Shown here piece by piece: positions 1,456 to 48,143 of a stretch of DNA of 64,000 nucleotides. Both the position numbers and the translations under genes were made by a program. Position 1 is the first letter of the stretch. Every line of letters starts with the position of its first letter. The stretch is from assembly GCA_950097015.1 (NCBI GenBank), contig CATNEN010000003.1, forward strand, positions 4,464,001 through 4,528,000, read 5' to 3'. The stretch is from Macrostomum hystrix. Taxonomy: Eukaryota; Animalia; Platyhelminthes. The notes under the pieces are model-generated. The model saw only the letters and a list, made by a program, of their open reading frames with translations. It searched no databases and was not told the origin of the DNA.

Positions 1456-4400
1456 TCAATCCTTGCCAGGCTTCTTCTGTGACACGGTGCCCGGCTTCTG
1501 CTGAGCATCCGGGTGGCTGGCCAGCTCGTGAGGACAGGTTGACACAGGGGACGAAAGCAGCAGCTGTTTGAGATCGTAGAATATCGCTGAGTCGTCCTTA
1601 GTTAAGAAGGTGACAGCCTTGCCAGCTTTGCCGGCTCGACCAGTTCGACCAATGCGATGAGTGTAGGTCTGGATGTCCTTGGCCATGTCATAGTTGATCA
1701 CCATCGACACGTCCTTGATGTCGATGCCTCGACTGGCAACGTCGGTGGCCACCAGGATGTCTTTCTGGCCGGATTTCAGGCTGCTCAGAGCGAGGTCGCG
1801 CTGATCCTGACCTTTGTCACCATGCAGTGAGACCTGAAAAATGGTTTACGCGAGGAATGAGTAAAAACATGTATACATTGTACGGTGAGAATGAGTACAC
1901 AAGTGTACAGCGAGAATGAGTACATACATGTACAGTGAGAATGACTACACACATGTACGGTGAGAATGAGTACACAAGTGTACAGCGAGAATGAGTACAC
2001 ATGTACAGTGAGAATGAGTACACACATGTACGGTGAGAATGAGTACACACATATGTACAGTAATAATGAGATCACCCTAGATAGGAAGAATATTATGACG
2101 AGAATCGAACACCCAACCTTTAAGTGTTGAGTGCGACTCTATAACACACAGGCTACAGCGCTCTTGTACGAGTATGAAGAAATGAGTACACAGAACGTCC
2201 AAAAATGAGTCCTACTCACACTGCTGTATCCGAGTCGCTCCAGGCCCTTAGTTAGCAGGTCGGCGCCCCTCTTGTGATTAACAAAGATGATAATCGGCGG
2301 ATCGATGCCTCGCTCAAGCATCTGCTGCAGTCGGACGCGTTTCTGATCTTCAGATGTCATCATAATGACGGTCTGTTCAACTCGCTCGGTCGGCTTACCG
2401 ACGGAGCCGATGTACACGATGGCGGGTCGGCGCAGGTAGGTGCGGGCTAGCCGTTCAACAGCCGGCGGCATCGTGGCTGTGAACATGACAGTCTGGCGGA
2501 ATTTTCTTTTAGTAGCAAAATTACTCATTAGAAAGTCTTCGGATTCTACTTCTTCCGTGTCTGGCTTCTGATTAGTTACTGGCAGGTGTTCAAGCACTTT
2601 CTGAACCTCCGGCTCGAAGCCCATGTTAATCATCTTGTCGGCTTCGTCCAGGATGACGTAGGTACACTGGCCCAAGACTAGGTAGCGATTCTCTAGCACG
2701 TCCAAGAGGCGACCAGGTGTAGCCACGACTATTTCACAGCCTTGGCGCAGTTTAAAGCCCTGTAAATGGGTTGATTTAAAAGGAAGTTACTTACATATAG
2801 GGAGATTGTGGTAAAAAAGGCTGGGTGATTGTGGGAGAAAAGGCTAGGAGATTGTGGGAAAAAAGGCTTAGAGATTGTGGTAGAAAAGGCTTAGAGATTG
2901 TGGCAGAAAAGGCTGGGAGATTGTGGCAGAAAAGGCTGGGAGATTGTGGCAGAAAAGGCTGGGAGATTGTGGCAGAAAAGGCTGGGAGATTGTGGCAGAA
3001 AAGGCTGGGAGATTGTGGGAGAAAAGGCTGGGAGATTGTGGGAGAAAAGGCTGGGAGATTGTGGGAGAAAAGGCTAGGAGATTGTGGGAGAAAAGGCTTA
3101 GAGATTGTGGCAGAAAAGGCTGGGAGATTGTGGCAGAAAAGGCTGGGAGATTGTGGCAGAAAAGGCTGGGAGATTGTGGCAGAAAAGGCTGGGAGATTGT
3201 GGCAGAAAAGGCTGGGAGATTGTGGCAGAAAAGGCTGGGAGATTGTGGCAGAAAAGGCTGGGAGATTGTGGGAGAAAAGGCTGGGAGATTGTGGGAGAAA
3301 AGGCTAGGAGATTGTGGGAGAAAAGGCTGGGAGATTGTGGCAGAAAAGGCTGGGAGATTGTGGCAGAAAAGGCTGGGAGATTGTGGGAGAAAAGGCTGGG
3401 AGATTGTGGGAGAAAAGGCTAGGAGATTGTGGGAAATAAGACTGGGATATTGTGGGGAAAAACACTGGGAGATTTTGGGAGAAAAGTCTAGTAATATGGG
3501 GTATTATGGAATATTTTAAGAGAAAATGGGCGATTGTGGTAGTGGGAGGAAAGTGTGATAACATGGATCTTTCGTAAGGAAAATAGGAGATTGATGGAGA
3601 AAAGTGGGACATGATGGAATATTTTGAGAGAAGATGTGTTCCAACCTGTTCCTCGCGACTCAGGCCGCCAATAACGGACACAATCTTGATGCCCAATGGG
3701 CGGCCAAATTTGAAAGCCTCCTCCTCAATCTGCTGGGCCAGCTCTCTGGTCGGGGCCATGATCAGCGCGTAGGGACCCTGCTCTGCGTCTTCGGCCCGTT
3801 CCAGTTTGGGCAGGCTCATGATCCAGGTCAGCAGCGGGATGAGGAAGGCGGCGGTCTTGCCGGAGCCGGTCTCGGCCACGCCAATGATGTCGCGATTCTG
3901 CAGGCCGATGGGAATAGCCTGACGTTGAACAGGGCTAGGATCCTTGTAGCCCACCGCCTCGATGACTTCGATGAGTTCGCGCCGAAGGCCGGCCTCGGCC
4001 CAGTTTCGCAACGGCCTGGGAATGTTGCCGCCCTTTGTGGAGATGCTGAAATCTTCGCGGAAGATGCGCCAGTCTCGCTCCGTCATCTCGTCCAGCTTCT
4101 TGGCCGACCAGTGGCGATCGTCGAACTTTTGTCTGGCCTCGCGGTTCAAGATGTGATCCAGGCGCTTCTCCTCCTGAGCACGCTGAGCTTCGGTTCGGCG
4201 AGTCTCCAGCATGCTGGAATAGAATTTGCCAATCTCCTTGCGCTGGGTCTTCACGTCGATGCCGGCCAGGTGACCTCGGCCGAATAGTTGCACCTAGTTG
4301 GATGGGTGGACGCGGAATGGTCGAACTTGGCCATAGACTGTAGAAACTTATCAAAAAACGGATCAGGAATCTGATGAAGATGCGAACCGAAAACTTACAG

Positions 4401-5871
4401 AGCAAAGCAGGAAACAGACGAAGAATCGAAGCAGGAAACAGAAGAAGAATCGAAGCAGGAAACAGACAAAGAATCGAAGCAGGAAGCATACAAAAATCGA
4501 AGCAGGAAGCTTACAAAAAATCGAAGCAGGAAGCTTACAAAGAATCGAAGCAGGAAACAGACGAAGAATCGAAGCAGGAAACAGAGAAAGAATCGAAGCA
4601 GGAAACAGACAAAGAATCGAAGCAGGAAACAGACGAAGAATCGAAGCAGGAAGCTTACAGAAAATCGAAGCATGAAGCTTACAAAGAATCGAAGCAGGAA
4701 ACAGACAAAGAATCGAAGCAGGAAACAGACAAAGAATCGAAGCAGGAAACAGACAAAGAATCGAAGCAGGAAACAGACGAAGAATCGAAGCAGGAAAGAC
4801 AAAAAATCGAAGCAGAAATCTTGAGAATAAACCAAGCCGAAATCTAAATCTGAGTAAGAAGCGAAGTGCAAGAAAGTGAAGAGAAAAAAGTTAAATTTTA
4901 CAATCACGGACCTGGTGCTTATCCTTGTACAGGCTGTTATAATCCTGGCTGGTATCCTCTGTTGCGTCCCAGTCGAACACAAATTTTCTTTCGTTCTGAC
5001 GTCGCTGCTTCTTTCTAGCCTTCTTAGCGCCCAGGTAGCGCTCGCGAATGGCGTCCAACACCCGACTGTCGGCAGTTCCAGCTTCACCGTCACGATCCCG
5101 ATCCCGATCCCGATCCCGATCCCCATCACGGTCGCGATCCCGATCCCTGTCGCGGTCACGATCCCGATCTCGATCTCCTCGACGATCCCGATCTCGATCC
5201 CTGTCCCTGTCTCTGTCCCGATCACGATCGCGACGATCCGATCGCTGCTGCTGTTGCTGCTGCTGCTGGTCCGGGGTCATCAGCTGCTGCCGCTGAAGCT
5301 GCTGCTGGGCTCGCATCAGTTCAACCTGTTCAGCGCGACGTTTCAAAGCCTCGGCGGCGCGCTCCTCCTTAGTTAAAAACTTTGGTCGCGCTTGTTCAGC
5401 TTCTAAAGCTTTCTTTCTAGCCAGAACTTCTTCGAGACTTAGTGGCGCAGCTTTCTTAGCGGGCTGGCTAGCTGGTTTCTGATCATCTTCGTCCAGCTGG
5501 TTCACTGTTTTACTACTTGCAGTAGTAGCAGTAGCGCCTTCAGCTGTGGCAGCGTTGGAATCCTTTTTCCTACGCTTGGAATCTTTGTGCCGCTGGTCGT
5601 CCTTATCGGTGCCGTTGTTGGCGTCTCGATCCCGACTGCGGCTGCGTTGTTTGCGCTTCTTTTCTCGCTTCTCTTTTTTCTCTTTCTTCTCCTTCTTCTC
5701 TTTCCTGTCTTTGTGATGCCGACGAGACGATGAAGTCTCAGACAATTCCACCGGCTTGGAGACAGCCTCTTCCGTTGGCTTAGCCTCCGGCTCAACCACA
5801 GCAGCCGCCGGAGCGACAGGAGCAGCTTCGGCGACCGCTTCTACGTCCATTGAATCGCCATCGCTGGTCAT
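1456..5871 (-). CDS. DDX23: DEAD-box RNA helicase DDX23/Prp28; exons 5871-4912, 4293-3646, 2759-2220, 1833-1456 (about 841 aa)
   Basis: [54 protein letters not shown] and [10 protein letters not shown] motifs; RD-repeat N-terminus; all three introns are GT-AG and phase-consistent. Confidence 0.97.
1850..2060. repeat. about 23-25 bp minisatellite (gagaatgagtacacatgtacagt) in DDX23 intron 3
   Basis: Direct tandem copies. Confidence 0.85.
2100..2163 (-). mobile_element. tRNA-derived SINE head fragment (family A)
   Basis: Reverse complement tgtagcctgtgtgttatagagtcgcactcaacacttaaaggttgggtgttcgattct resembles the head at 25915-25980. Confidence 0.55.
2800..3435. repeat. 23-bp minisatellite (gggagattgtggcagaaaaggct) in DDX23 intron 2
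   Basis: Near-perfect tandem copies that decay toward 3630. Confidence 0.95.
4400..4815. repeat. 24-bp minisatellite (aagaatcgaagcaggaaacagaca) in DDX23 intron 1
   Basis: Tandem copies. Confidence 0.95.
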
Positions 5872-5880
5872 AATTTAAAA

Positions 5881-5900
5881 CTGAAACAAAAAGAAATATT
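5881..5900 (-). promoter_or_regulatory. Putative trans-splice acceptor of DDX23
   Basis: tttctttttgtttcAG|ttttaaattATG; no upstream exon evident. Confidence 0.6.
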
Positions 5901-6749: not shown

Positions 6750-7205
6750 GACAAACTGTTGACAAAGTAGCGATATTTATTCGTGGACAAACTAGCGATA
6801 TTTGTCTGTGAAAAAGTAACGATATGTCTCCGTGGACAAAGTAACGATGTCTCCGTGGACAAAGTAACGATATGTCTCCGTGGACAAATTAGCGATATGT
6901 CTCCGTGGAAAAAGTAGCGATATTTATCAGTGGACAAAGTAGCGATATTTATCAGTGGACAAAGTAGCGATATTTATCAGTGGACAAAGTAGCGATATTT
7001 ATCAGTGGACAAAGTAGCGATATTTATCAGTGGACAAAGTAGCGATATTTATCAGTGGACAAAGTAGCGATATTTATCAGTGGACAAAGTAGCGATATTT
7101 ATCAGTGGACAAAGTAGCGATATTTATCAGTGGACAAAGTAGCGATATTTATCAGTGGACAAAGTAGCGATATTTATCAGTGGACAAAGTAGCGATATTT
7201 ATCAA
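6750..7205. repeat. 25-bp minisatellite (gtggacaaagtagcgatatttatca), intergenic
   Basis: Tandem copies, degenerate at the left end. Confidence 0.95.
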
Positions 7206-7287: not shown

Positions 7288-10200
7288 TCACACAGGTTTA
7301 ACATCAACTAAAAATACCCGCCTTTTCAACGCATACGGGAGAGCCAATTTGTCAACCTTGGCAACAAAATTAACTGGTCCGAGAATTGTGTGCATTTTCA
7401 ACGCCGCGGCTAGCAGCAGGCTAGGAGGCTCAGCTAGCCATTGCATCAACAGTTGGCCAGCTTCCGTGACAACAGTCGGATAGGTGAGCAGTGAGTTGTC
7501 TGTGGACGGCGGCGCAATGGCCTGCCTGACAGCCCGCAGCCAGGCGGGTCCAGCTGGCAGTTTGAACATGATCAAGAAGATCAGGTAGAGAATTCGAAGC
7601 CTAGCGACGGCTTTGTCATCCGAGTGCAGCTCGTCCGACAGACGTCCAGAACTTCCAGAAGCTGACGATGGAGGCATCAGGAGCATTTCGGATGCGCGAT
7701 TACCACAGGCTGCTATGCTGATCAGATCGGTGAGGTTGATCCTGCAATTGGCAATCATAGGCGTGCGGTGAGTGAGTGAGTGAGTGAGTGAGTGAATGAG
7801 TGAGTACTGAGTGAGTGAGTGAGTTAGTGACTGAGTGAGTGAGTGAGTGAGTACTGAGTGAGTGAGTGAGTGGGTGAGTGAGTGGGTGATTGACTGAATG
7901 ACTTGTGAGTGAGTTAGTGACTGAGTGAGTGACTGAATGACTTAGTTAGTGAGTGACTGAGCGAGTGAGTGAGTGAGTTTACTATCAATCACACTCACCT
8001 ATCAGGTGAGAGGTAGGCAGCAAGCGAGAAGTCTTTAGGATGGTGCAGGCAGTTGTAGCCAAGCAGGGCTTCCATTGTGCCAAACGGGTCAGCCTTGGGG
8101 CCGCCAATGTCGGCGCGCAGAAAAGCGACGGCGGTCGATACAATGGACGGCATGACCGGCAGAGGATCCGCGCCGTTGCTAAGCAACAATCTGACACAAT
8201 CGGCGTGCGATTTATCGGCCAGAATGCTTAGCGGACTCTGGCGAGAGCTGTTTAAAATGTTGATGGCCTGCGGGCACTTGGTTACTAGGGCTCGGATCTG
8301 CAATATTGAATTCAGAAGGATGAGGTTCCTATGAGCTTGGTCATGCTTAAGATTAAGCTGCGTATGAGCTTGGTCATGCTAAAGACTAATCTGCGTATGA
8401 GCTTGGTCATGCTGAAGACTAATCTGCGTGTGAGCTTGGTCATGCTAAAGACTAATCTGTGTATGAGCTTGGTCATGCTAAAGACTAATCTGCGTATGAG
8501 CTTGGTCATGCTAAAGAATAATCTGCGTATGAGCTTGGTCTAATCTGCGTATGAGCTTGGTCATGCTAAAGACTAATCTGCGTATGAGCTTGGTCATGCT
8601 AAAGACTAATCTGCGGATGAGCTTGGTCATGCTAAAGACTAATCTGCGTATGAGCTTGGTCATGCTAAAGACTAATCTGCGTATGAGCTTGGTCATGCTA
8701 AAGACTAATCTGCGTATGAGCTTGGTCATGCTAAAGACTAATCTTGCGTATGAGCTTGGTCATGCTAAAGACTAATCTGCGTATGAGCTTGGTCATGCTA
8801 AAGACTAATCTGCGTATGAGCTTGGTCATGCTAAAGACTAATCTGCGTATGAGCTTGGTCATGCTAAAGACTAATCTGCGTATGAGCTTGGTCATGCTAA
8901 AGACTAATCTGCGTATGAGCTTGGTCATGCTAAAGAATAATCTGCGTATGAGCTTGGTCATGCTAAAGACTAATCTGCGTATGAGCTTGGTCTAATCTGC
9001 GTATGAGCTTGGTCATGCTAAAGACTAATCTGCGTATGAGCTTGGTCATGCTAAAGACTAATCTGCGGATGAGCTTGGTCATGCTAAAGACTAATCTGCG
9101 TATGAGCTTGGTCATGCTAAAGACTAATCTGCGTATGAGCTTGGTCATGCTAAAGACTAATCTGCGTATGAGCTTGGTCATGCTAAAGACTAATCTTGCG
9201 TATGAGCTTGGTCATGCTAAAGACTAATCTGCGTATGAGCTTGGTCATGCTAAAGACTAATCTGCGTATGAGCTTGGTCATGCTAAAGACTAATCTGCGT
9301 ATGAGCTTGGTCATGCTAAAGACTAATCTGCGTATGAGCTTGGTCATGCTAAAGACTAATCTGCGTATGAGCTTGGTCATGCTAAAGAATAATCTGCGTA
9401 TGAGCTTGGTCATGCTAAAGACTAATCTGCGTATGAGCTTGGTCTAATCTGCGTATGAGCTTGGTCATGCTAAAGACTAATCTGCGTATGAGCTCGGTCA
9501 TGCTAAAGACTAATCTGCGTATGAGCTTGGTCATGCTAAAGACTAATCTGCGTATGAGCTTGGTCATGCTAAAGACTAATCTTGCGTTTGAGCTTGGTCT
9601 AATCTGCGTATGAGCTTGGTCATGCTAAAGACTAATCTGCGTATGAGCTTGGTTATGCTAAAGACTAATCTGCGTATGAGCTTGGTCATGCTAATGACTA
9701 ATCTGCGTATGAGCTTGGTCATGCTAAAGACTAATCTGCGTATGAGCTTGGTCATACTGAAGACCCAACCGTGTGTTGATCCTTATCACACTAAAATATT
9801 CACTAATGCTAATGACTGGAGAAAATTAATTCTGACGTCACTCACAGCTTCGCAATGACCCTCAGTGGAGGCATATAACAGTGGCGTATTCCCATTGGCA
9901 TCTGTTGCCATGCTGTCGGCGCCGTGCAGCAGCAGGAAGTCCACGCCAATCGCGTACAGCGCGGCGCAGTGCAACGGCGAGCCATCGGCGCACGGATGAC
10001 CCAACACCGGATCATCTTCCGGGCCGAGAAAGTCCAGATGGAAAGCCTCCTGTTGAGGCTTGGCGTTGACGGAATAGCCGCGCCCAACCAGGGCACGCAT
10101 GGCTTCCATAGCAACGCTGCCTTGGCAACTGTAGAGTCGCCTAGCGGCACTGAGTACACAGTCCTGGCCGATGCTGATTCGGCCAGAGTTCAGCAGGGCA

Positions 10201-10568
10201 AACAGCCTCTCTCCAGTCAGTGCAGGCGAGCTCTGCAGCAGATCCCGAAACAGAGCAGACTGAGCAGCCGGCGACACCAGGCAGAACAAGTTAGGCGCTT
10301 CTGAAGGCGCGAATGCGGCCAGGTGATAGCGAATATGGCGACAGAGCCTGTAGCCAAGGTTTCTCTGCGAATTGAATTTCTCCGGCCGATGCTCGCCGGC
10401 TTCGGCTACCAGAGCTTCGACAGCCGGCAGGTTTCCGTGTACAAAGGCCAGCTCTAGGAGGCGATCAAACGATGCCGGAGTTTCGTAGGCGATGGTGCGC
10501 AAAAGTTCTCGCAGCAGCTGGGGACTGCGCGACTTTAGTATGTACTCCTGCTGGCGAGCGTCCGACAT
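7288..10568 (-). CDS. Ankyrin-repeat and SOCS-box (ASB-like) protein; exons 10568-9846, 8297-7999, 7741-7288 (about 491 aa)
   Basis: Ankyrin repeats GSPLHCAA..LLLHGAD, GNTPLLYASTEGHCEA|IRALV and QSPLSIL..CVRLLLSNGAD; C-terminal PPSLLLAAALKMH..VDKLALPYALKRRV is SOCS-box-like; splice phases are consistent. Confidence 0.8.
7768..7978. repeat. (GAGT)n microsatellite in ASB-like intron 2
   Basis: Tandem tetramer. Confidence 0.95.
8331..9760. repeat. 33-bp minisatellite (atgagcttggtcatgctaaagactaatctgcgt) in ASB-like intron 1, with a 452-bp higher-order duplication
   Basis: Tandem copies; near-identical variant patterns at 8511-8961 and 8963-9413. Confidence 0.97.
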
Positions 10569-10679
10569 TACTCAACTACGATTGGCTGCTATTTTTAGAA
10601 TTCAGTTGGGCGAAGGGGCGCAAGTTAAAGCTGAAATTTTTATGACTCCTTTATTGTCGATATCGGCAGGCAACATGGG

Positions 10680-13600
10680 GATAATTGATTCTGATAGGGA
10701 AGGGATAATTGGTTCTGATAGGAAGGGGATAATTGGCTGTGATAGGGAAGGGATAATTGATTCTGATAGGAAGGGATAATTGATTCTGATAGGAAGGGAT
10801 AATTGATTCTGATAGGAAGGGATAATTGATTCTGATAGAAAGGGATAATTGACTGTGACAGGGAAGGGATAATTGACTGATAGGGAGGGGATAACTGACT
10901 ATGATAGGGAAGGGATAACTGACTGTGATAGGGAAGGGATAACTGACTGTGATAGGGAAGGGATAACTGACTATGATAGGGAAGGGATAACTGACTGTGA
11001 TAGGGAAGGGATAACTGACTGTGATAGGGAAGGGATAACTGACTGTGATAGGGAAGGGATAACTGACTGTGATAGGGAAGGGATAACTGACTGTGATAGG
11101 GAATGGATAACTGACTGTGATAGGGAAGGGATAACTGACTGTGATAGGGAAGGGATAACTGACTGTGATAGGGAGGGGATAACTGACTGTGATAGGGAAG
11201 GATAACTGACTGTGATAGGGAAGGGATAACTGACTGTGATAGGGAAGGGATAACTGACTGTGATAGGGAAGGGATAACTGACTGTGATAGGGAGGGGATA
11301 ACTGACTGTGATAGGGAAGGATAACTGACTGTGATAGGGAAGGGATAACTGACTGTGATAGGGAAGGGATAACTGACTGTGATAGGGAAGGGATAACTGA
11401 CTGTGATAGGGAAGGATAACTGACTGTGATAGGGAAGGGATAACTGACTGTGATAGGGAAGGGATAACTGACTGTGATAGGGAAGGGATAACTGACTGTG
11501 ATAGGGAAGGGATAACTGACTGTGATAGGGAAGGGATAACTGACTGTGATAGGGAAGGGATAACTGACTGTGATAGGGAATGGATAACTGACTGTGATAG
11601 GGAAGGGATAACTGACTGTGATAGGGAAGGGATAACTGACTGTGATAGGGAGGGGATAACTGACTGTGATAGGGAAGGATAACTGACTGTGATAGGGAAG
11701 GGATAACTGACTGTGATAGGGAAGGGATAACTGACTGTGATAGGGAAGGGATAACTGACTGTGATAGGGAGGGGATAACTGACTGTGATAGGGAAGGATA
11801 ACTGACTGTGATAGGGAAGGGATAACTGACTGTGATAGGGAAGGGATAACTGACTGTGATAGGGAAGGGATAACTGACTGTGATAGGGAAGGATAACTGA
11901 CTGTGATAGGGAAGGATAACTGACTGTGATAGGGAAGGGATAACTGACTGTGATAGGGAAGGGATAACTGACTGTGATAGGGAAGGGATAACTGACTGTG
12001 ATAGGGAAGGATAACTGACTGTGATAGGGAAGGGATAACTGACTGTGATAGGGAAGGGATAACTGACTGTGATAGGGAAGGGATAACTGACTGTGATAGG
12101 GAAGGGATAACTGACTGTGATAGGGAATGGATAACTGACTGTGATAGGGAAGGGATAACTGACTGTGATAGGGAAGGGATAACTGACTGTGATAGGGAGG
12201 GGATAACTGACTGTGATAGGGAAGGATAACTGACTGTGATAGGGAAGGGATAACTGACTGTGATAGGGAAGGGATAACTGACTGTGATAGGGAAGGGATA
12301 ACTGACTGTGATAGGGAGGGGATAACTGACTGTGATAGGGAAGGATAACTGACTGTGATAGGGAAGGGATAACTGACTGTGATAGGGAAGGGATAACTGA
12401 CTGTGATAGGGAAGGGATAACTGACTGTGATAGGGAAGGGATAACTGACTGTGATAGGGAAGGGATAACTGACTGTGATAGGGAAGGATAACTGACTGTG
12501 ATAGGGAATGGATAACTGACTGTGATAGGGAATGGATAACTGACTGTGATAGGGAAGGGATAACTGACTGTGATAGGGAAGGGATAACTGACTGTGATAG
12601 GGAGGGGATAACTGACTGTGATAGGGAAGGATAACTGACTGTGATAGGGAAGGGATAACTGACTGTGATAGGGAAGGGATAACTGACTGTGATAGGGAAG
12701 GGATAACTGACTGTGATAGGGAGGGGATAACTGACTGTGATAGGGAAGGGATAACTGACTGTGATAGGGAAGGGATAACTGACTGTGATTGGGAGGGGAT
12801 AACTGACTGTGATAGGGAAGGATAACTGACTGTGATAGGGAAGGGATAACTGACTGTGATAGGGAAGGGATAACTGACTGTGATAGGGAAGGGATAACTG
12901 ACTGTGATAGGGAAGGATAACTGACTGTGATAGGGAAGGGATAACTGACTGTGATAGGGAAGGGATAACTGACTGTGATAGGGAAGGGATAACTGACTGT
13001 GATAGGGAGGGGATAACTGACTGTGATAGGGAAGGATAACTGACTGTGATAGGGAAGGGATAACTGACTGTGATAGGGAAGGGATAACTGACTGTGATAG
13101 GGAAGGGATAACTGACTGTGATAGGGAAGGATAACTGACTGTGATAGGGAAGGGATAACTGACTGTGATAGGGAAGGGATAACTGACTGTGATAGGGAAG
13201 GGATAACTGACTGTGATAGGGAAGGGATAACTGACTGTGATAGGGAAGGGATAACTGACTGTGATAGGGAAGGGATAACTGACTGTGATAGGGAATGGAT
13301 AACTGACTGTGATAGGGAAGGGATAACTGACTGTGATAGGGAAGGGATAACTGACTGTGATAGGGAGGGGATAACTGACTGTGATAGGGAAGGATAACTG
13401 ACTGTGATAGGGAAGGGATAACTGACTGTGATAGGGAAGGGATAACTGACTGTGATAGGGAAGGGATAACTGACTGTGATAGGGAGGGGATAACTGACTG
13501 TGATAGGGAAGGATAACTGACTGTGATAGGGAAGGGATAACTGACTGTGATAGGGAAGGGATAACTGACTGTGATAGGGAAGGGATAACTGACTGTGATA

Positions 13601-14257
13601 GGGAAGGGATAACTGACTGTGATAGGGAAGGGATAACTGACTGTGATAGGGAAGGATAACTGACTGTGATAGGGAATGGATAACTGACTGTGATAGGGAA
13701 TGGATAACTGACTGTGATAGGGAAGGGATAACTGACTGTGATAGGGAAGGGATAACTGACTGTGATAGGGAGGGGATAACTGACTGTGATAGGGAAGGAT
13801 AACTGACTGTGATAGGGAAGGGATAACTGACTGTGATAGGGAAGGGATAACTGACTGTGATAGGGAAGGGATAACTGACTGTGATAGGGAGGGGATAACT
13901 GACTGTGATAGGGAAGGGATAACTGACTGTGATAGGGAAGGGATAACTGACTGTGATAGGGAAGGGATAACTGACTGTGATAGGGAAGGGATAACTGACT
14001 GTGATAGGGAAGGGATAACTGACTGTGATAGGGAAGGATAACTGACTGTGATAGGGAAGGATAACTGACTGTGATAGGGAAGGGATAACTGACTGTGATA
14101 GGGAAGGGATAACTGACTGTGATAGGGAAGGGATAACTGACTGTGATAGGGAAGGATAACTGACTGTGATAGGGAAGGGATAACTGACTGTGATAGGGAA
14201 GGGATAACTGACTGTGATAGGGAAGGGATAACTGACTGTGATAGGGAAGGGATAACT
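10680..14257. repeat. 24-bp minisatellite (gataactgactgtgatagggaagg), about 150 copies, filling the KTI12-ASB spacer
   Basis: Tandem 24/23-bp units, degenerate at the left end. Confidence 0.98.
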
Positions 14258-14446
14258 ATACTCAGACAGAACGGATGGGAATAAAAACTGACAGTTGATA
14301 CAGTAGTGAAGAAGCTAACAATGATCAACGTGAAATAGATAATGCGTATTTTGTATATTCTGTCTAATGAAAACATCTTAAATCGAAGGTCCATTCGCAG
14401 GTCACTCGCACGGCCTGTTACAAGAATTGTAAAATAATAACTATTT

Positions 14447-15304: not shown

Positions 15305-15329
15305 CTGGATTGTGATAAAGATAAAAAAT

Positions 15330-16584: not shown

Positions 16585-17043
16585 CAGCGGTAGGCAAACT
16601 TATTTGCTGGCGGGCCAAAGAGAGAACCTAAAAGACGACAGCGGGCCGCATTAACTGTATAAATATGAGATAGGGGAGAGATGAGACACGGGAGAGATGA
16701 GACACAGGAAAGATGGGACACGAGAGAGATGAGACACGGGAGAGATCATGATCTGCAGACACGGGAGAAATTAGACAAGGGAGAAATTAGACACGGGAGA
16801 AATTAGACACGGGAGAGATCAGACACAGGAAAGATGGGACACGAGAGAGATGAGACACGGGAGAAATTAGACACGGGAGAGGTCAGACACGGGAGAAATT
16901 AGATACGAGAGCGATGAGACACGGGAGAGATTAGACACGAGAGAGATGAAACAGGACACTGTAGATGTCAGAAGGGGCAACGGGCCGGATTGGGAGCTTC
17001 GAGGGCCGCATCTGGCCCGCGGGCCGGAGTTTGCCGACCCCTG
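16585..17043. mobile_element. Non-autonomous hAT (Charlie-like) MITE with an internal about 17-bp minisatellite
   Basis: TIRs CAGCGGTAGGCAAACT / CAGGGGTCGGCAAACT (14 of 16 match); perfect 8-bp TSD GTCTAGTC at 16577-16584 and 17044-17051. Confidence 0.9.
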
Positions 17044-23866: not shown

Positions 23867-24039
23867 TGCAGACTGCTCAGCTGCAAAGGTTGGGTTGGAT
23901 TCGATTTTGATTCTTAGAATAATACGCACGTTGGCCTGTATAATAGCCTGTCAAAAATATGTAAATTAACCTGTAAATTAAACTATATTAACTTGTAAAT
24001 TAGACTGGCATTACCTCTACAACTAATCACTTACTTGTA

Positions 24040-25140
24040 GTTGAGCCAGTCATTAGCATGTAGTTTAGTCTGTCATTAACCTGTAGTTTAGTCTGTCATT
24101 AACCTGTAGTTTAGTCTGTCATTAACCTGTAGTTTAGTCTGTCATTAACCTGTAGTTTAGTCTGTCATTAACCTGTAGTTTAGTCTGTCATTAACCTGTA
24201 GTTTAGTCTGTCATTAACCTGTAGTTTAGTCTGTCATTAATCTGTAGATTAGTCTGTCATTAACCTGTAGTTTAGTCTGTCATTAACCTGTAGTTTAGTC
24301 TGTCATTAACCTGTAGATTAGTCTGTCATTAACCTGTAGTTTAGTCTGTCATTAACCTGTAGATTAGCCTGTCATTAACCTGTAGTTTAGCCAGTCATTA
24401 GCATGTAGTTTAGTCTCTCATTAACCTGTAGATTAGCTTGCTATTAACCTGAAGATTAGCCTGTCATTAACATGTAGTTTAGTCTGTCATTAACCTGAAG
24501 TGTAGCCAGCTATTAGCATGTAGTTTAGCCAGTCATTAGCATGTAGTTTAGCCAGCCATTAGCATGTAGTTTAGCCTGTCATTAACCTGTAGTTTAGCCA
24601 GCCATTAGCATGTAGTTTAGACTGTCATTAACCTGTAGTTTAGCCAGCCATTAGCATGTAGTTTAGCCAGTCATTAGCATGTAGTTTAGTCTGTCATTAA
24701 CCTGTAGATTAGTCTGTCATTAACCTGTAGATTAGTCTGTCATTAACCTGTAGTTTAGTCTCTCATTAACCTGTAGATTAGCCTGCTATTAACCTGTAGT
24801 TTAGTCTGTCATTAACCTGAAGTGTAGCCAGCTATTAGCATGTAGTTTAGCCAGTCATTAGCATGTAGTTTAGCCTGTCATTAGCATGTAGTTTAGCCAG
24901 TCATTAGCATGTAGTTTAGCCTGTCATTAACCTGTAGTTTAGCCAGTCATTAGCATGTAGTTTAGCCAGTCATTAGCATGTAGTTTAGCCAGTCATTAGC
25001 ATGTAGTTTAGCCAGTCATTAGCATGTAGTTTAGCCAGTCATTAACCTGTAGTTTAGCCAGTCATTAGCATGTAGTTTAGCCTGTCATTAACCTGTAGTT
25101 TAGCCAGTCATTAAGCTGTAAAATAGCCTATCATTAACTT
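24040..25140. repeat. 23-bp minisatellite (tgtagtttagtctgtcattaacc / tgtagtttagccagtcattagca), intergenic
   Basis: Two interleaved unit variants. Confidence 0.95.
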
Positions 25141-25693: not shown

Positions 25694-26448
25694 CTATTTT
25701 TGGTCAACGAATCCCATAACGCTATCCAAAAATTTGGCGAATATCTCTGGTTCGCCGCGCGGAAACGGTTTCAGATGCCCGGCTGGAGTCAGGTTGCGCA
25801 GGGCGTCCTCTAAGTCAGCGCACACAGCCGTGTCCAGGTGGCCGTCTCTGCAAGACGAGAAACAACTTTGGACTGACCAACTTGGTTTGCTGTTACATTT
25901 ATCCATCTAGACATGAGGACTTGTAGCCTAGTGGTTAGAGTGTGCGACTAAACACTTTAAGGTCGGAGGTTCGATTCTTAATTTGTGCCCTTTAGCAAGA
26001 CACTTAACAATGCATTGCTTCAGTTCATGGATTAAATGGGTACCAGCATCAGTTGACGTCGGTCATGATTTTACCTGGCAACTCGCTGAGCAAGCTCAGT
26101 CTGGTGATTATGCATCAGGTCGTCATTGACAACAACTAGCAATCGTTTGCCAGCGTTCAACGATTCCAGGACGCTGCCAGCCCCGGCGTGGCTGATGACT
26201 AAACCGGCTGCGGCCACATCAGCGGCTAGTGACGGCTTGAAGCGATAATAGCTGACTGAAAAACGGCCCTCCAAAGGGTAATCTCTGGCCGTGTGAGCCG
26301 TGGGTTCGTATTCGCCACGCCCAATCTGCATAACTAGGCCGTGATAGCCCAGCTGATCGCACAGGATCTTATGCAATTCGACCGAATCTAGGCGCCGAAT
26401 CAGCGAATCGAATGATGTTGTGCCAACTGTTACAAATACGTTAGGCAT
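25694..26448 (-). CDS. ALG13: UDP-GlcNAc transferase subunit ALG13 (short form); exons 26448-26075, 25847-25694 (175 aa)
   Basis: VFVTVGTTSFDSLI, MQIGRG, YYRFKPSL, LVISHAGAGSVLE, VVVNDDLMHNHQTELA, GEPEIFAKFLD. Confidence 0.95.
25915..26060 (+). mobile_element. tRNA-derived CORE-like SINE (family A) in the ALG13 intron
   Basis: A-box tagcctagtggtt, B-box ggttcgattc, then gtgccctttagcaagacacttaac...aaatgggtaccagc. Confidence 0.75.
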
Positions 26449-26699
26449 TGCTTCGCCCTGTTGGATAGCTGTTTAAAGATTTTCCTCGCGAGTTAACGAG
26501 GCCCGACTGAATGTTAATGCGAACTGAAATGAGCGAATAAAACTGGGAAATAATTTTGGGATATAAAAAGTTGCTGAATAAGAGGGCTTTAGAATGATGG
26601 CTATTCAATTAAAATATATTCCGAAAATATATTTCGGGATGTAAAAATTGTGTGAATATGATTAGGGATAATAATTTGGGATAATAATTGCGTGCATAT

Positions 26700-27181: not shown

Positions 27182-27487
27182 CTAATAGATTTCAGAATAC
27201 TTCTTTCCGCGAAATCGATTTCGCATATCCAGCTGCTCGCGCCGGCAGATGAACAGGCTGTACCTCACTGAGCGGCACTCCTCGGACACGTCGGCTTTGG
27301 GGTCGCGCAGGCAGTCCAAAGGTGTGCGACGATCGCGCTTAACGCAGTCTGACAACAGCAGACACAGGCGGAGCTCCTCTTTCAGTTGCGTGCAAGCCTT
27401 CCTTGGGCCACTGCTTGCTGCCTTATCAACGCTGTGACTAGCAGTACTATTGTTAGTAGTATCGGCTGTGTTACTAGTTGATGTCAT
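27182..27487 (-). CDS. COA5: Cytochrome c oxidase assembly factor 5 (Pet191), single exon, 101 aa
   Basis: ACTQLKEELRLCLLLSDCV..TPLDCL..EECRSVRYSLFICRREQLDMRNRFRG, the twin-Cx9C-type Pet191 pattern. Confidence 0.92.
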   Translation of the reverse strand: MTSTSNTADTTNNSTASHSVDKAASSGPRKACTQLKEELRLCLLLSDCVKRDRRTPLDCLRDPKADVSEECRSVRYSLFICRREQLDMRNRFRGKKYSEIY

Positions 27488-27639
27488 TTAGAGTATAGCA
27501 GCAAGAATTTCACAGTAGAGGCATTAGAATTTCGAAAACAATTTACTGCAAAAGAGAGAAGGTTTTGTTTCACTGCATTTATAATAATTACCGGATTTAA
27601 CTATTACTAAATCTCTTCAATTTCCCTAAATACTAACTC

Positions 27640-28666
27640 TGTCATTACATTCCCTAAATACAGTCAATAAAGACTGTCATTACATTCCCTAAATACAGTC
27701 AATAAAGACTGTCATTACATTCCCTAAATACAGTCAATAAAGACTGCCATTACATTCCCTAAATACAGACAATAAAGACTGTCATTACATTCCCTAAATA
27801 CAGTCAATAAAGACTGCCATTACATTCCCTAAATACAGACAATAAAGACTGTCATTACATTCCCTAAATATAGTCAATAAAGACTGCCATTACATTCCCT
27901 AAATACAGACAATAAAGACTGTCATTACATTCCCTAAATATAGTCAATAAAGACTGCCATTACATTCCCTAAATACAGACAATAAAGACTGTCATTACAT
28001 TCCCTAAATACAGACAATAAATACTGTCATTACATTCCCTAAATACAGTCAATAAAGACTGTCATTACATTCCCTAAATACAGTCAATAAAGACTGTCAT
28101 TACATTCCCTAAATACAGTCAATAAAGACTGTCATTACATTCCCTAAATACAGTCAATAAAGACTGTCATTACATTCCCTAAGTACAGACAATAAAGACT
28201 GTCATTGCATTCCCTAAATACAGTCAATAAAGACTGTCATTACATTCCCTAAATACAGTCAATAAAGACTGCCATTACATTCCCTAAATACAGTCAATAA
28301 AGACTGTCATTACATTCCCTAAATACAGTCAATAAAGACTGCCATTACATTCCCTAAGTACAGTCAATAAAGACTGTCATTACATTCCCTAAATACAGTC
28401 AATAAAGACTGTCATTACATTCCCTAAATACAGTCAATAAAGACTGTCATTACATTCCCTAAATACAGTCAATACAGACTGTCATTACATTCCCTAAATA
28501 CAGACAATAAAGTCTGTCATTACATTCCCTAAATACAGTCAATAAAGACTATCATTACATTCCCTAAATACAGTCAATAAAGACTATCATTACATTCCCT
28601 AAATACAGTCAATAAAGACTATCATTACATTCCCTAAATACAGTCAATAAAGACTGTCATTACATT
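27640..28666. repeat. 35-bp minisatellite (gtcattacattccctaaatacagtcaataaagact), intergenic
   Basis: About 29 tandem copies. Confidence 0.97.
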
Positions 28667-29228: not shown

Positions 29229-29532
29229 GGGGGATCGGTGGCAGAGCGGTTATCGCGTTTGCCTCTCGCACCAAGGTCCCTGAGTTCGATTCCACGGCGA
29301 GGCCACATTCATTTGGGGCGCAGCCGCGGAGAGAAGGCTTGGGGGGCTTGTCGTGCAATTTACGCCCTTGAGGGCCAACCTCTAAGGCACAGTGAGAGTG
29401 TACACTGCCTGACGATGAGAAAGTCATGGCAGATGTACACACCCGTGTGAGCGTATGCCTGCGTACAGTATCTGTGTGCGCGTGTGCTCAGGAGTCAGCG
29501 AAATGGGCAGAGTTGCCTCCTCGCTGGCTTCG

Positions 29533-29565
<33 letters not shown>

Positions 29566-30030
29566 TGACACTAGACCCAAGGGCCAGCGCAGGTGTTGTG
29601 TGTCAGGCACACTAGCAGGTGGGGACTGCACACCTATTGTACTCCCCGGCTCTCTCGGACACCGGTTGACAGCCGCGTGTCAGCAATGGAATTTATTTTT
29701 TCCAAACATATCGGCAGCATCCAAACCCCACAGAATTGCCGCACAGAACTGCTTTATTCCACGCCAGCCGGAATTATTATTACCCAAAGAAATGTCGGTA
29801 CTCATTTGCAGCTGAGTAGACTGTGTGCACATCAGGGCAAAGCAGCTTGCTAAAGGCTGCACGAATAGTTCTAGACTAAGTCGGGAGTCGAACCCAGGAC
29901 CATCTGATCCAGAGTCCGACACCTTACTGACTGAGCTATCCGCCCTTGCGGGTCTAGTGTCACTATGATGATGATGTGCCACTGCCCACAGCCCTCCTGC
30001 AATTATTATTATTATTATTATTATTATTCA
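29229..30030 (+). mobile_element. tRNA-derived SINE (family B), interrupted by a nested SINE
   Basis: A-box tggcagagcggt, B-box gagttcgattcc, (ATT)n tail; homologous to the copies at 30706, 33727, 35675 and 57195. Confidence 0.88.
29536..29946 (-). mobile_element. tRNA-derived CORE-like SINE nested antisense in the family-B SINE
   Basis: Reverse complement gggcggatagctcagtcagtaagg...gggttcgactccc head, CORE-like cctttagcaag...aaatgagtacc, (TAT)n tail; flanked by ttcgggt/tgcgggt. Confidence 0.85.
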
Positions 30031-30098
30031 CAGTGCTTTTAAATATGAAACTATTTTGCTTCGTCGCTACAAAACAAAATCAAAGACTCATTAAATTT

Positions 30099-33087: not shown

Positions 33088-36000
33088 TCAAACTCTGCTG
33101 CTACAATTATCGGCTGAGGCGAGTTGTATACCGCGTAGTTGCCAACGCGTTGCATCCTCCGTCGCGGCCGAATCGGCCGTCAAAGACGAAGCCATTGTGG
33201 ACGAAGCCGGTAAGAATCCGGCGCAATTGTCTGGCATCGGACGTTGAGCTAACCAAGACGCAGACTGGTACGAAGCGCTAACGCCTTCGTCTGTTAGTTC
33301 CAACTGTCTGCGAGGATTTCCTTGGCCAGGCGTCTTGCATAATCGACGCTTAATACGATTAGTAAAAATTATAGAAGCGAAGATAATAGCCACAATTATT
33401 AATAAACTGATGCCCAACCAGTCAGCTAATTGCATAGTGGCCAATCGTTTTTGTTGATCTGATTGTCTTCGAAGACTACCCAAACTGGTATAGTAGGCGC
33501 CTGGACCTGTAGCTAGAGCTGAGCACAGATAGCCCAGTTGGTCTGAACAGTCTCGCAGGCGCATTGTGCCAATCATTCCATTGGAGATTTCGTAGGCTAG
33601 ACAGGCGCAATTGTTTGACTCGGCTTCGCAATCGCGACCAAAACTGGCGGGGACAAAATTGATTGGGATGAAATCTGACTGTTAACGAGGCAGAGAAAAG
33701 GTTCATTTAATAACAGGTAGCTAAACTGGGGTGTCATTGGTAGAGAGGTTAACGTGTTTGTCTCTCGCACCTAGGTCCTGAGCTCGATTCCGCGGCGAGG
33801 TCACATTCACTTGGAATGCAACCGCGGAGAGAAGGCTTGTATGCTTGTCGTGCAATTTACGCCCTCGATGGCCAACCTTCAAGACACAGTGAATGAAGTG
33901 TACACTCCTGATGATGAGAAAGTCAGGGCAGATGTACACAGCTGTGTGAGAGTGTGCCTGCGTACGGGTCTAGTGTCACAAAATGATGTGCCATTGCCTG
34001 CAGCTCTCCTGCAACTATTGTTATTATTATTATTAAATACTGAGGCTACATAAATATTAAAAGTAACGGAATAGACAAAACAGGACGAACTAACGAATTT
34101 AAGGACCGCTAAATAACGAACGAAAATAATTGATACATATTTTAAAAGTCTAGTCTTGCACAGAAATCAAATTAGAAATTTATCATTGTGTTTAACAGTA
34201 TTCTAAATGTGTTATACAGGTTTCTAAATGTGTTATACAGTTTTCTAAATGTGTTTAATAATTTTCCAGATAATTTCAAAAGTTTTCTGAATGCGTCTAA
34301 AAGTTTTTTTAATTCGTTTATTGGTTAAAAAAGATTTATTTGCTACTGGGGAGGAATTAGTTCTCTGCTACTGGGGGGATTAGTTCTCTGCTACTGGGGG
34401 GATTAGTTCTCTGCTACTGGGGGGGATTAGTTCTCTGCTACTGGGGGGATTAGTTCTCTGCTACTGGGGGGATTAGTTCTCTGCTACTGGGGGGATTAGT
34501 TCTCTGCTACTGGGGGGATTAGTTCTCTGCTACTGGGGGGGATTAGTTCTCTGCTACTGGGGGGATTAGTTCTCTGCTACTGGGGGGATTAGTTCTCTGC
34601 TACTGGGGGGATTAGTTCTCTGCTACTGGGGGGGATTAGTTCTCTGCTACTGGGGGGATTAGTTCTCTGCTACTGGGGGGATTAGTTCTCTGCTACTGGG
34701 GGGATTAGTTCTCTGCTACTGGGGGGATTAGTTCTCTGCTACTGGGGGGATTAGTTCTCTGCTACTGGGGGGATTAGTTCTCTGCTACTGGGGGGATTAG
34801 TTCTCTGCTACTGGGGGGATTAGTTCTCTGCTACTGGGGGGATTAGTTCTCTGCTACTGGGGGGGATTAGTTCTCTGCTACTGGGGGGATTAGTTCTCTG
34901 CTACTGGGGGGGATTAGTTCTCTGCTACTGGGGGGGGGAATTTGTTCTCTGCTGCTGGGGGGACATTGGTTTTTTACTTTTTACCGATGAGGGGATAGTA
35001 TTCACATGTACCTTAGTAGAATTAAGCTGAGTTGTATCAAACGTAAGTTACTTGTGTAATTTTGCCCCAATGGGGCTTTTGGTGTACAGACCGGATGTCT
35101 CAGAATGTATTCAAGCTCAGACTGACTATTTTTGTATTTAGTGAGAATTCAAATTCTCTTTGATTCGCAATCAGAGAAATTAATACAGACGAAATGAGTT
35201 TTTGTTTGCTTTCAGGTGTGTTTCGTCCCTATGCGTTGCACAAGAGTTTTTGTCTGAACAGTAGTGCCCCCCAAGGGAGGCTTAGTGTGCTAGTTAGAAA
35301 CTAAACCTCACCTCAAACTAAAGCTCTGACCATTCAGATACTCCGGCGCCTCAGCGGCTTGAAATCGTTTCGCCCCAATCCAATAAGCTGGCGCGGCTAT
35401 GCCTAGCGAATAGGTAGCCGATGCTACGGCGGCATCGAAATCAGCCGCGGATCGGTGCTGAATGGCTAGATTAGCCCGAAGCAGCATGCAGCCAGTTATA
35501 GCCGACTCGAATGACACCGATTGGGCAAATCTGACAAGAAAATGGCGGAGTAGGCCAGGCTGATGATTGCCTTATTTTATTTGCTTCGAACAGAAAACAC
35601 ACTTTAAAGGATTTTGGGATAGAAATTAATGTGGCCTAGTTGTGTTTATAGGGCATGACAATAAGGGAGTGCGAGGGGCTGAGTGGCAGAGTGGTCAACA
35701 CGTTTGCCTCTCGCACCAAGGTGCCTGAGCTCGAGTCCGCGGTGAGGCCACATTAATATAGGGCGCTGCCGTAGAAAGAAGGCTTTGGTGGTTTTGCGTA
35801 CACTATAAAGTGTACACTACCTGACAATTAGAAAGTCAGGGCAGATGTACACACCTGTGTGAGCGTGTGCCTGCTTACAGTAGCAAAATGGGCAGAATTG
35901 CCTCTTCTCTGGCTGCGGGGCTAGTGTCACAAAACGATGTGCCAGTGCTTGCAGCTCTCCTGCAACTATTCTTATTACTAAAGTAGTGTGAAATACCCCC

Positions 36001-36541
36001 AAAAACAGAACATGGTTTTGTACCTTGGCACGCCAAAGCAGTAGCTATCCGACAGTTGCCAACCAAAAGGGCATTGGCCAGCTGAAACAAACTGAACGTC
36101 CAGCAATAGGGTAGCAACACCGGCATCGATTTCGGCAAAAATGGCAACAAAGAAAGTGCGACGTTGAAACTCAGTAGCAAACTGGCGATAGATCATGCCA
36201 GATACACTGGAATCCCATAATAGGCTGCCAATGGCGGACGATTCGCGTAGTATTGCTCTGCTACCAGTAATCAGGTTTGTACTAGGCAGAATTGTCACGA
36301 CAATGTAGCCATCAGCTGGTTGGCTAGCACCTGCGCTAAATACAAGGCTACAGTTAGATTTTAGTGCGCCAGTAAAGTTAAATGTCAAATTTAATGTAGC
36401 ATTGTTGCTAAGCAACTCAATCGAAGCGGGGATTCTTGTGTGGATTGTGCCAGCACTGCATGAAACTGTTTGGCCATAGATGCTAGTTGCAGCTATTATT
36501 GCTAGCAAAAGTAAAGCAGTAACCAGGCTCTTGTCAGGAGC
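33088..36541 (-). CDS. Type I membrane protein with a C-type-lectin-like domain; exons 36541-36024, 35530-35312, 33643-33088; no genomic ATG
   Basis: Signal peptide APDKSLVTALLLLAIIAATSIYG; lectin-like domain CPFGWQLSDSYCF..FESAITGC..YWIGAK..CACL..DCSDQLGYLC; TM segment WLGISLLIIVAIIFASIIF; two phase-2 introns join in frame. Confidence 0.8.
33727..34035 (+). mobile_element. SINE family B copy with an internal deletion
   Basis: Same head and body, (ATT)n tail. Confidence 0.85.
34340..34965. repeat. 23-bp G-tract minisatellite (ctactggggggattagttctctg) in lectin intron 2
   Basis: Tandem copies with G6-G7 runs. Confidence 0.97.
35675..35978 (+). mobile_element. SINE family B copy in lectin intron 1
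   Basis: tggcagagtggtc...gagctcgagtcc head and the shared body. Confidence 0.82.
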
Positions 36542-36986
36542 CTGCACAAATAATATCTTAAAGCTGTTGGGTGGCTGCAATGAATTTTTTCTCAATGTGT
36601 AAGTAGAAAATTTTGCATCCTAAATGTTTGACAAATTAGCTCATTTACTTCAAAAAACTTTGTTTTTATTTAAAGAATATATGAATAGCACTTCATATTG
36701 AATATAGTATACTGTGGCGGAGAGTGCACTCTACCCCAGACAGCCGGCCCCAGACATCACACCACGGTCTGGGCGGATGCGTCACCCCTGCTCGCGCGGT
36801 CGCATTGGTTTGCGATCCTCAGTGGGGTTGGGGACATGGAGAAGTCGCGCTGGCCTTTATAAGGCTCTTTGTCTCGGGCACAGAGCCCTCACCCCTTTTT
36901 GCGAACTCAAATAAACACGAACTCGTTTGCGAAGCCAACTCGGCAACCCGCTACATTGGTGAGCCCGACGCAGCCATTTCGTTCCA

Positions 36987-48104: not shown

Positions 48105-48143
<39 letters not shown>

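What the first reader, a model, noticed from the sequence alone, without database searches (positions are those of the whole stretch)
1456..36543. Candidate eight-gene, 35-kb trans-spliced operon
Seen: eight consecutive minus-strand genes (lectin, METAP1, COA5, ALG13, SRA, KTI12, ASB-like, DDX23). Each starts just after a candidate acceptor AG (36543, 32502, 27547, about 26525, 23882, 15306, about 10587, 5882) with no evident upstream exon. The KTI12-to-ASB spacer has only about 190 bp plus about 90 bp of unique sequence around a 3.6-kb minisatellite, leaving little room for a promoter. Known: flatworms use SL trans-splicing to resolve polycistronic pre-mRNA, often of unrelated housekeeping genes. 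Inference: this is one polycistronic unit, unusually long and with repeat-inflated spacers.
Basis: partly seen in the sequence, partly recalled or inferred. Interest (0 to 1): 0.85.

Follow-up and report, generated by a model that had tools for sequence, protein, structure and literature searches.

The report
Flatworm eight-gene operon candidate, unproven
Eight neighbouring same-strand genes of a Macrostomum flatworm look like genes that receive a spliced leader. Their spacers are short once repeats are removed, so they fit the published rule for operons in this genus. No RNA data could be reached to show they are copied as one 35-kb transcript, and this kind of repeat-swollen operon is already described.

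Summary
Eight consecutive minus-strand genes lie between a divergent and a convergent neighbour. Seven are confirmed by Pfam; the "lectin" and "ASB" labels are not. The genome is a Macrostomum: the exact 35-nt M. lignano spliced leader, ending in ATG, occurs in arrays followed by a GTRAG donor.

- **KTI12 and gene 1 have no start codon.** Each opens directly after an AG. Both M. lignano KTI12 copies are 5'-partial and begin at the same codon.
- **Five other genes have the acceptor motif.** The published YTNCAG motif lies 9-75 nt before their ATG.
- **All seven spacers are short after removing repeats.** They are 280-962 bp, under the 1-kb M. lignano rule. Only one is under the 300-bp rule used for parasitic flatworms.
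- **Part of the gene order is conserved.** ALG13, one gene, then KTI12 appears conserved on two M. lignano scaffolds.

My estimates: some junctions polycistronic but more than one unit, about 0.65; one eight-gene unit, about 0.15; all independent, about 0.12.

Operons of up to nine genes with repeat-inflated spacers are published for M. lignano. This scan has also noted a similar eight-gene candidate elsewhere in this genome (s1-300488).

The parts
33088..36543 (-). The candidate SL acceptor AG is at 36543-36542, with an alternative in-frame YTNCAG acceptor at 36576-36575. There is no ATG; the first codons encode APDKSLVTALLLLAIIAATSIYG. The last exon, 33576-33088, carries a TM helix.
   Evidence: No Pfam or PDB support for a lectin fold. 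Weak paralogue on contig C29.
30099..32502 (-). Gene 2: METAP1. Acceptor AG 32502-32501 (TTACAG), ATG 32488, stop 30099.
   Evidence: zf-C6H2 at 2.5e-14. Peptidase_M24 in two exons. Motif.
27182..27547 (-). Gene 3: COA5/PET191, a single exon. Acceptor AG 27547-27546 (TTGCAG), ATG 27487, stop 27182.
   Evidence: Pet191_N at 3.5e-21..
25694..26525 (-). Gene 4: ALG13, two exons. Acceptor AG 26525-26524 (TTTCAG), ATG 26448, stop 25694.
   Evidence: Glyco_tran_28_C. 94% identical to M. lignano ALG13, P0122.
17426..23882 (-). Gene 5: SAD/SRA-domain protein. Acceptor AG 23882-23881 (TTGCAG), ATG 23867. The last exon, 17789-17426, is phase-compatible across the minisatellite intron. AATAAA lies 61 nt after the stop.
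   Evidence: SAD_SRA at 1.2e-32..
14447..15306 (-). Gene 6: KTI12, a single exon with no ATG. AG is at 15306-15305, and the first codon, CCT at 15304, starts PLVLICGLPASGKST. The start codon is inferred to come from the SL AUG.
   Evidence: KTI12 at 1.4e-74. No in-frame ATG upstream. Both M. lignano copies start PLVLLCGLPSSGKST and are flagged partial.
7288..10587 (-). Acceptor AG 10587-10586, or the YTNCAG site at 10632-10631. ATG 10568, stop 7288.
   Evidence: Ank repeats. No SOCS box found..
1456..5882 (-). Gene 8: DDX23. Acceptor AG 5882-5881 (TTTCAG), ATG 5871, stop 1456. AATAAA lies 32 nt after the stop.
   Evidence: DDX23 domain plus DEAD..
10678..14257 (.). A 24-bp minisatellite of about 150 copies. 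It fills the spacer between KTI12 and the ankyrin gene. Unique flanks are 189 bp and 90 bp.
27639..28666 (.). A 35-bp minisatellite in the METAP1-to-COA5 spacer.
29238..30033 (.). Dispersed repeats in the METAP1-to-COA5 spacer. They comprise a young 400-bp element at 29539-29949 (97-98% identical to at least 39 other copies listed) and a SINE-like copy of about 300 bp at 29238-29535.
24036..25138 (.). A 23-bp minisatellite in the ALG13-to-SRA spacer.
16123..17183 (.). A dispersed repeat with an internal 16-mer array, in the SRA-to-KTI12 spacer. A further repeated piece lies at 15384-15530.
6761..7204 (.). A 25-bp minisatellite in the spacer between the ankyrin gene and DDX23.
36713..41061 (+). 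An LTR retrotransposon lying antisense to the cluster. It sits about 170 bp upstream of the gene-1 acceptor, so any shared promoter lies in that 170 bp or beyond 41.06 kb.
   Evidence: LTRs of 244 bp, 100% identical. ATAC duplicated at both flanks. RT, RNase H and integrase in that order.

Best explanation
The eight genes are a cluster of spliced-leader (SL) trans-spliced genes in a Macrostomum genome. I think the cluster is organised as operon-type units, but as more than one unit.

**Proposed mechanism (inferred):** RNA polymerase II reads through at least some junctions. Most likely these are KTI12 to the ankyrin gene (280 bp unique) and COA5 to ALG13 (457 bp). The downstream message is cut free and capped when the 35-nt SL is added at the AG acceptor. 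For KTI12 and gene 1 the SL also supplies the AUG. The junctions with more unique sequence (SRA to KTI12, 911 bp; ankyrin gene to DDX23, 962 bp; METAP1 to COA5, 727 bp; ALG13 to SRA, 709 bp) could each contain a promoter of their own.

**Shown:** the genes, the acceptor sequences, the two genes without an ATG, the SL genes, the spacer composition and partial synteny.

**Inferred:** actual SL addition at each site, and any co-transcription.
For: - **SL genes.** The exact M. lignano SL occurs 149 times in this genome, including 11.6-kb-period arrays. It is followed by a GTRAG donor.
- **KTI12 start.** The open frame has no ATG, and PLVL... begins right after an AG. M. lignano PAA82840.1 and PAA54849.1 are 5'-partial from the same codon. 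That fits an annotation pipeline that trimmed the SL from the reads (PMC5730564).
- **Gene 1 start.** It likewise has no ATG, and either candidate acceptor is in frame with the SL AUG.
- **Acceptor motif.** YTNCAG lies 9-75 nt before five ATGs, against a density of 1 per 344 nt.
- **Spacers.** Repeat-adjusted stop-to-acceptor distances are 586, 727, 457, 709, 911, 280 and 962 bp. All are under the 1-kb rule of PMC8629364.
- **Synteny.** M. lignano ALG13 and KTI12 accessions differ by exactly 2 on two scaffolds (82842/82840 and 54847/54849). Both proteins are also reported on a 594,077-bp scaffold.
- **Gene content.** Conserved housekeeping genes are the class enriched among SL and operon genes in M. 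lignano.
Against: - No RNA evidence of any kind was obtained.
- Spacers of 457-962 bp unique are well above the roughly 100-bp mode of intercistronic distances.
- Only 1 of 7 junctions meets the 300-bp rule of PMC12582326.
- In parasitic flatworms the same acceptors are often also used for cis-splicing from upstream exons.
- Three-gene synteny does not prove co-transcription.
- The reading of accession numbers as gene order is an assumption about GenBank numbering.
Confidence: 0.65

Rival explanations
1. One reading: one promoter upstream of gene 1 drives a single polycistronic pre-mRNA of about 35 kb. It covers all eight genes and is resolved at eight SL acceptors.
For: - All seven repeat-adjusted spacers are under 1 kb, so the whole block meets the published M. 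lignano definition.
- Operons of up to nine genes are reported there.
- No opposite-strand gene interrupts the block, and divergent and convergent neighbours bound it.
- The first gene is itself trans-spliced by inference, as in 82% of M. lignano operons.
Against: - It needs all seven junctions to be read through. With per-junction odds of about 0.5-0.85, the product is small.
- In M. lignano, 93% of operons have 2-3 genes.
- Five or six spacers keep more than 450 bp of unique DNA.
- A 4.3-kb retrotransposon with identical LTRs now sits 170 bp upstream of gene 1.
- There is no RNA support.
Confidence: 0.15
2. There is no operon. The eight genes are transcribed independently and merely share a strand. 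Each has its own promoter in its spacer, and each 5' end is trimmed by SL trans-splicing of a short outron (the pre-mRNA stretch upstream of the acceptor), or by cis-splicing.
For: [quoted passage not shown]
- Eight-gene same-strand runs are expected by chance more than 100 times in a genome of about 34,500 genes.
- Most spacers hold several hundred bp of unique sequence.
- A tissue-type membrane protein (gene 1) is an odd partner for housekeeping genes.
Against: - The KTI12-to-ankyrin-gene junction has only 189 + 90 bp of unique DNA.
- All seven junctions fall below the valley of the published bimodal distance distribution.
- The order ALG13, one gene, KTI12 is kept on two M. lignano scaffolds.
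Confidence: 0.12

Closest known systems
Macrostomum lignano SL operons (Ustyantsev & Berezikov 2021, PMC8629364; Wudarski et al. 2017, PMC5730564)
   Same: - Same 35-nt SL ending in AUG.
- Same YTNCAG-type acceptor.
- Same-strand conserved housekeeping genes.
- Spacers inflated by tandem and dispersed repeats that fall under 1 kb once repeats are subtracted.
- Operons of 2-9 genes are described.
   Different: - This is another Macrostomum species; orthologues are 74-94% identical.
- Here the SL sites and transcription units lack RNA support.
- Eight genes would sit at the extreme tail, since 93% of published operons have 2-3 genes.
- Adjusted spacers are mostly 450-960 bp, against a mode near 100 bp.
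Operon candidates of parasitic flatworms (Schistosoma, Echinococcus and others; PMC12582326)
   Same: SL trans-splicing resolves polycistrons of unrelated genes. The maximum reported is nine genes. A single SL class serves both operon genes and monocistronic genes.
   Different: Those candidates are defined by intergenic distances of 300 bp or less. In S. mansoni the median intercistronic distance is 99 bp. Only one of the seven junctions here would qualify.
Caenorhabditis elegans SL2-type operons
   Same: Two to eight genes, mostly housekeeping. The downstream 5' ends are made by trans-splicing.
   Different: C. elegans uses a dedicated SL2 and intercistronic regions of about 100 nt. Macrostomum has one SL, so the leader gives no operon-specific mark, and the spacers here run to kilobases.
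SL-donated start codons in flatworms
   Same: KTI12 and gene 1 open directly after an AG with no ATG. The SL ends in AUG.
   Different: Nothing differs in kind. The RNA junction was not seen here. Other follow-ups in this scan report seeing it for other genes of this genome.

Membership tests
Macrostomum-type SL operon (operational definition of PMC8629364) | Adjacent genes on one strand, with no opposite-strand gene between them. | tested here: met
   Eight minus-strand genes lie between 36.5 kb and 1.4 kb, with plus-strand genes only outside. The one plus-strand feature nearby is a retrotransposon upstream of gene 1.
Macrostomum-type SL operon (operational definition of PMC8629364) | Repeat-adjusted intergenic distance below 1 kb. 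| tested here: met
   Distances of 586, 727, 457, 709, 911, 280 and 962 bp, measured from stop codon to acceptor. These include the 3' UTRs and are therefore upper bounds.
Macrostomum-type SL operon (operational definition of PMC8629364) | The downstream gene is shown by SL-containing RNA reads to be trans-spliced. | tested here: inconclusive
Indirect evidence only: two genes without an ATG, M. lignano KTI12 5'-partial at the same codon, and motif enrichment.
Operon in the strict sense (one promoter, one polycistronic pre-mRNA) | RNA molecules spanning the spacers, and no internal transcription start sites. | not testable with these tools
Parasitic-flatworm operon candidate (PMC12582326) | Same-strand genes with an intergenic distance of 300 bp or less. 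| tested here: not met
   Only the KTI12-to-ankyrin-gene junction (280 bp after repeat removal) passes. The other six are 457-962 bp (for the rule).
SL trans-splicing system of Macrostomum | SL RNA genes in the genome: the 35-nt leader ending in ATG, followed by a GT donor. | tested here: met
   149 matches at 3 or fewer mismatches, with exact copies in 11.6-kb-period arrays. SL followed by GTRAG in 3 of 6 fetched loci.
SL-donated start codon | No in-frame ATG between the upstream stop and the conserved N-terminus, with an AG directly before codon 2. | tested here: met
   KTI12: CAG|CCT CTT GTA, encoding PLVLICGLPASGKST. Gene 1: CAG|GCT CCT, encoding the signal peptide.
Conserved operon (synteny across species) | Same gene order in another Macrostomum species. 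| tested here: inconclusive
   The order ALG13, one gene, KTI12 is inferred on two M. lignano scaffolds from accession numbers two apart.

The most novel reading that the evidence does not exclude
All eight genes are one 35-kb polycistron. RNA polymerase II would run through a 3.6-kb minisatellite, three more kilobase-scale arrays and young transposon insertions. In this reading the KTI12 message carries the whole minisatellite in its 3' UTR, because the only canonical AATAAA lies 68 nt before the next gene's acceptor. That would put it among the largest animal operons by gene number. It would also be a natural test of how trans-splicing tolerates repeat expansion inside intercistronic RNA.
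Probability: 0.13. Interest if true: 0.45.

Novelty: new member of a known kind. Interest (0 to 1): 0.3.

Why it matters
If confirmed, this would be one more large operon in a genus where about 15% of genes are already assigned to operons. It would be useful for annotation, because KTI12 and gene 1 would otherwise be called without a start codon. It would also help in asking how much repeat DNA an intercistronic region can absorb. It would not change the current picture of flatworm gene expression, and it opens no long-standing question.

Tried and rejected
- **M. lignano locus tags.** I first read the tag BOX15_Mlig019088g2 as "second gene of a transcription unit". This was rejected: g1 and g2 are two KTI12 copies on different scaffolds.
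- **The search of protein representatives** with exon 1 of the ankyrin gene was swamped by ankyrin-repeat proteins and gave no orthologue.
- **The COA5 search** found only an unnamed MetaClust protein.
- **Supplement searches** of three M. lignano papers for the gene names found nothing. A paper search by gene names also found nothing.
- **The repeat finder** on the whole region returned only the tandem arrays. I replaced it with a masked self-BLAST.
- **Rfam** found nothing in the window.
- **Poly(A) hexamers near acceptors** were rejected as evidence. Their density in the spacers, about 1 per 500 nt, makes such proximity expected by chance.
- **Joined spliced protein models** were not built or searched.
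Full report
**What the window is.** The window is G000:C3:4464001-4528000 of a 220-Mb, 42-contig genome. The 35-nt spliced leader (SL) published for Macrostomum lignano ends in ATG (PMC8629364). It occurs 149 times at three or fewer mismatches, with exact copies in arrays of about 11.6-kb period. In 3 of 6 fetched exact loci it is followed by a GTRAG donor. The best protein matches are M. lignano at 74% (KTI12) and 94% (ALG13) identity. So this is a Macrostomum other than M. lignano. Earlier notes of this scan call it M. hystrix; I did not verify the species.

**The observation.** Eight minus-strand genes are real.
- Seven have Pfam support: METAP1 (zf-C6H2, Peptidase_M24), COA5 (Pet191_N), ALG13 (Glyco_tran_28_C), an SAD/SRA protein, KTI12 (1.4e-74), an ankyrin-repeat protein, and DDX23.
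- Gene 1 has a signal-peptide-like start and a TM helix. It has no Pfam or PDB match, so "lectin" is unconfirmed. It has one weak paralogue.
- No SOCS box was found in the "ASB-like" gene.
- The cluster is bounded by plus-strand genes on both sides.
- The last SRA exon (17789-17426) is phase-compatible with the donor before the minisatellite intron. This fixes that gene's stop at 17426.

**Acceptors.**
- KTI12 has an open frame with no ATG, and CAG|CCT CTT GTA encodes PLVLICGLPASGKST, the canonical KTI12 N-terminus minus Met.
- Gene 1 reads CAG|GCT CCT..., a signal peptide without Met.
- Both M. lignano KTI12 proteins (PAA82840.1, PAA54849.1) are flagged partial and start PLVLLCGLPSSGKST. The M. 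lignano annotation trimmed the SL from the reads used to set transcript 5' ends (PMC5730564). This is indirect cross-species support for SL addition at exactly this codon.
- The published acceptor motif [T/C]TNCAG occurs once per 344 nt on this strand. It lies 9-75 nt before the ATG of METAP1, COA5, ALG13, SRA and DDX23.

**Spacers.** The table gives stop-to-acceptor distances, so all adjusted values include the 3' UTR and are upper bounds.

| Junction | Raw (bp) | Repeats removed | Adjusted (bp) |
|---|---|---|---|
| Gene 1 to METAP1 | 586 | none | 586 |
| METAP1 to COA5 | 2552 | 1,028-bp array; 796 bp dispersed, including a 400-bp element 97-98% identical to at least 39 listed copies | 727 |
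| COA5 to ALG13 | 657 | weak tandem array only | 457 |
| ALG13 to SRA | 1812 | tandem array only | 709 |
| SRA to KTI12 | 2120 | about 1,060 + 147 bp dispersed | 911 |
| KTI12 to ankyrin gene | 3860 | 3,580-bp minisatellite | 280 |
| Ankyrin gene to DDX23 | 1406 | tandem array only | 962 |

All seven are under the 1-kb repeat-adjusted threshold used to define operons in M. lignano. Only one is under the 300-bp threshold used for parasitic flatworms. Most are far from the roughly 100-bp mode.

**Synteny.** M. lignano ALG13 carries accessions PAA52438.1, PAA54847.1 and PAA82842.1. KTI12 carries PAA54849.1 and PAA82840.1. On two scaffolds the two genes are exactly two accession numbers apart, and both are reported on a 594,077-bp scaffold. 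If GenBank protein accessions run along scaffolds (established practice, but an assumption here), the order ALG13, one gene, KTI12 is conserved, matching ALG13-SRA-KTI12 in this window.

**What could not be tested.** Nothing here shows SL addition directly, any transcript across a spacer, or the absence of internal promoters.

**Weighing.**
- 60% of trans-spliced genes are not in operons.
- 75% of operons have two genes, 18% have three, and the maximum is nine.
- Same-strand runs of eight are expected more than 100 times by chance.

I give per-junction odds of read-through between about 0.5 (SRA to KTI12; ankyrin gene to DDX23) and 0.85 (KTI12 to ankyrin gene). A single eight-gene unit then comes to roughly 0.1-0.15 after allowing for correlation between junctions. 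No polycistronic junction at all comes to about 0.1. A mixed picture, with several units and some true polycistronic junctions, comes to about 0.65.

**Comparison and novelty.** The same paper states that repeats inflate operon spacers in M. lignano, and that is why its rule subtracts them. Operon candidates of nine genes are also reported in Schistosoma japonicum. An earlier follow-up in this scan (s1-300488) treated another eight-gene candidate in this genome and split it by the same rule. The present cluster differs in passing the rule at every junction. At best this is a new, large member of a known kind.

**Other observations.**
- An LTR retrotransposon (36713-41061) lies antisense about 170 bp upstream of the gene-1 acceptor. 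It has 100% identical 244-bp LTRs, ATAC duplicated at both flanks, open gag-like and pol frames, and RT-RNase H-integrase order. Any shared promoter is in that 170 bp or beyond 41.06 kb.
- KTI12 has no AATAAA or ATTAAA in the 189 bp before the minisatellite, only an AATATA variant. The only canonical hexamer is at 10655, 68 nt before the next acceptor. At the observed hexamer density this could be chance.

Noticed in passing
window 36713-41061 (+): An LTR retrotransposon with two 244-bp LTRs that are 100% identical and ATAC duplicated at both flanks. It has an open 1,064-aa pol frame (RT, RNase H, integrase in that order) and a 235-aa DUF7041 gag-like frame. This looks like a very recent insertion, 170 bp upstream of the gene-1 acceptor.
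   Followed up: partly
window 29539-29949: A 400-bp element 97-98% identical to at least 39 other copies listed across the genome, so a young high-copy mobile element. It sits 150 nt after the METAP1 stop. The two AATAAA hexamers after that stop lie inside it.
   Followed up: partly
window 29238-29535, 30707-30998, 33729-33965, 35676-35977, 57256-57332: A SINE-like repeat of about 300 bp (82-89% identical between copies). All four copies inside the cluster are in the same orientation, three in introns and one in a spacer.
   Followed up: no
window 10632-10586 and 36576-36542: Each of these two genes has two candidate acceptors. Both gene-1 sites are in frame with the SL AUG. The upstream ankyrin-gene site lies only 19 nt after an AATAAA.
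   Followed up: partly
window 14258-14446 and 10650-10655: KTI12 has no canonical poly(A) hexamer before the 3.6-kb minisatellite, only AATATA near 14357. The sole AATAAA lies beyond the array, so the array might be part of the KTI12 3' UTR.
   Followed up: partly
window 1879-34963: Nearly every intron and spacer of the cluster holds a minisatellite with a 16-35 bp unit, 0.2-3.6 kb long. These arrays total about 14 kb of the 35 kb.
   Followed up: no
M. lignano proteins PAA82840.1 / PAA54849.1 (P0001, P0121): In M. lignano locus tags (BOX15_MligNNNNNNgN), the gN suffix numbers the copies of a 95%-identity cluster. It does not give a gene's position in a transcription unit, which is an easy misreading.
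   Followed up: yes
window 46617-49444 (+): Long plus-strand ORFs, one rich in glutamine, with no Pfam match. They form the divergent neighbour of the cluster across an AT-rich region of about 5.5 kb.
   Followed up: no
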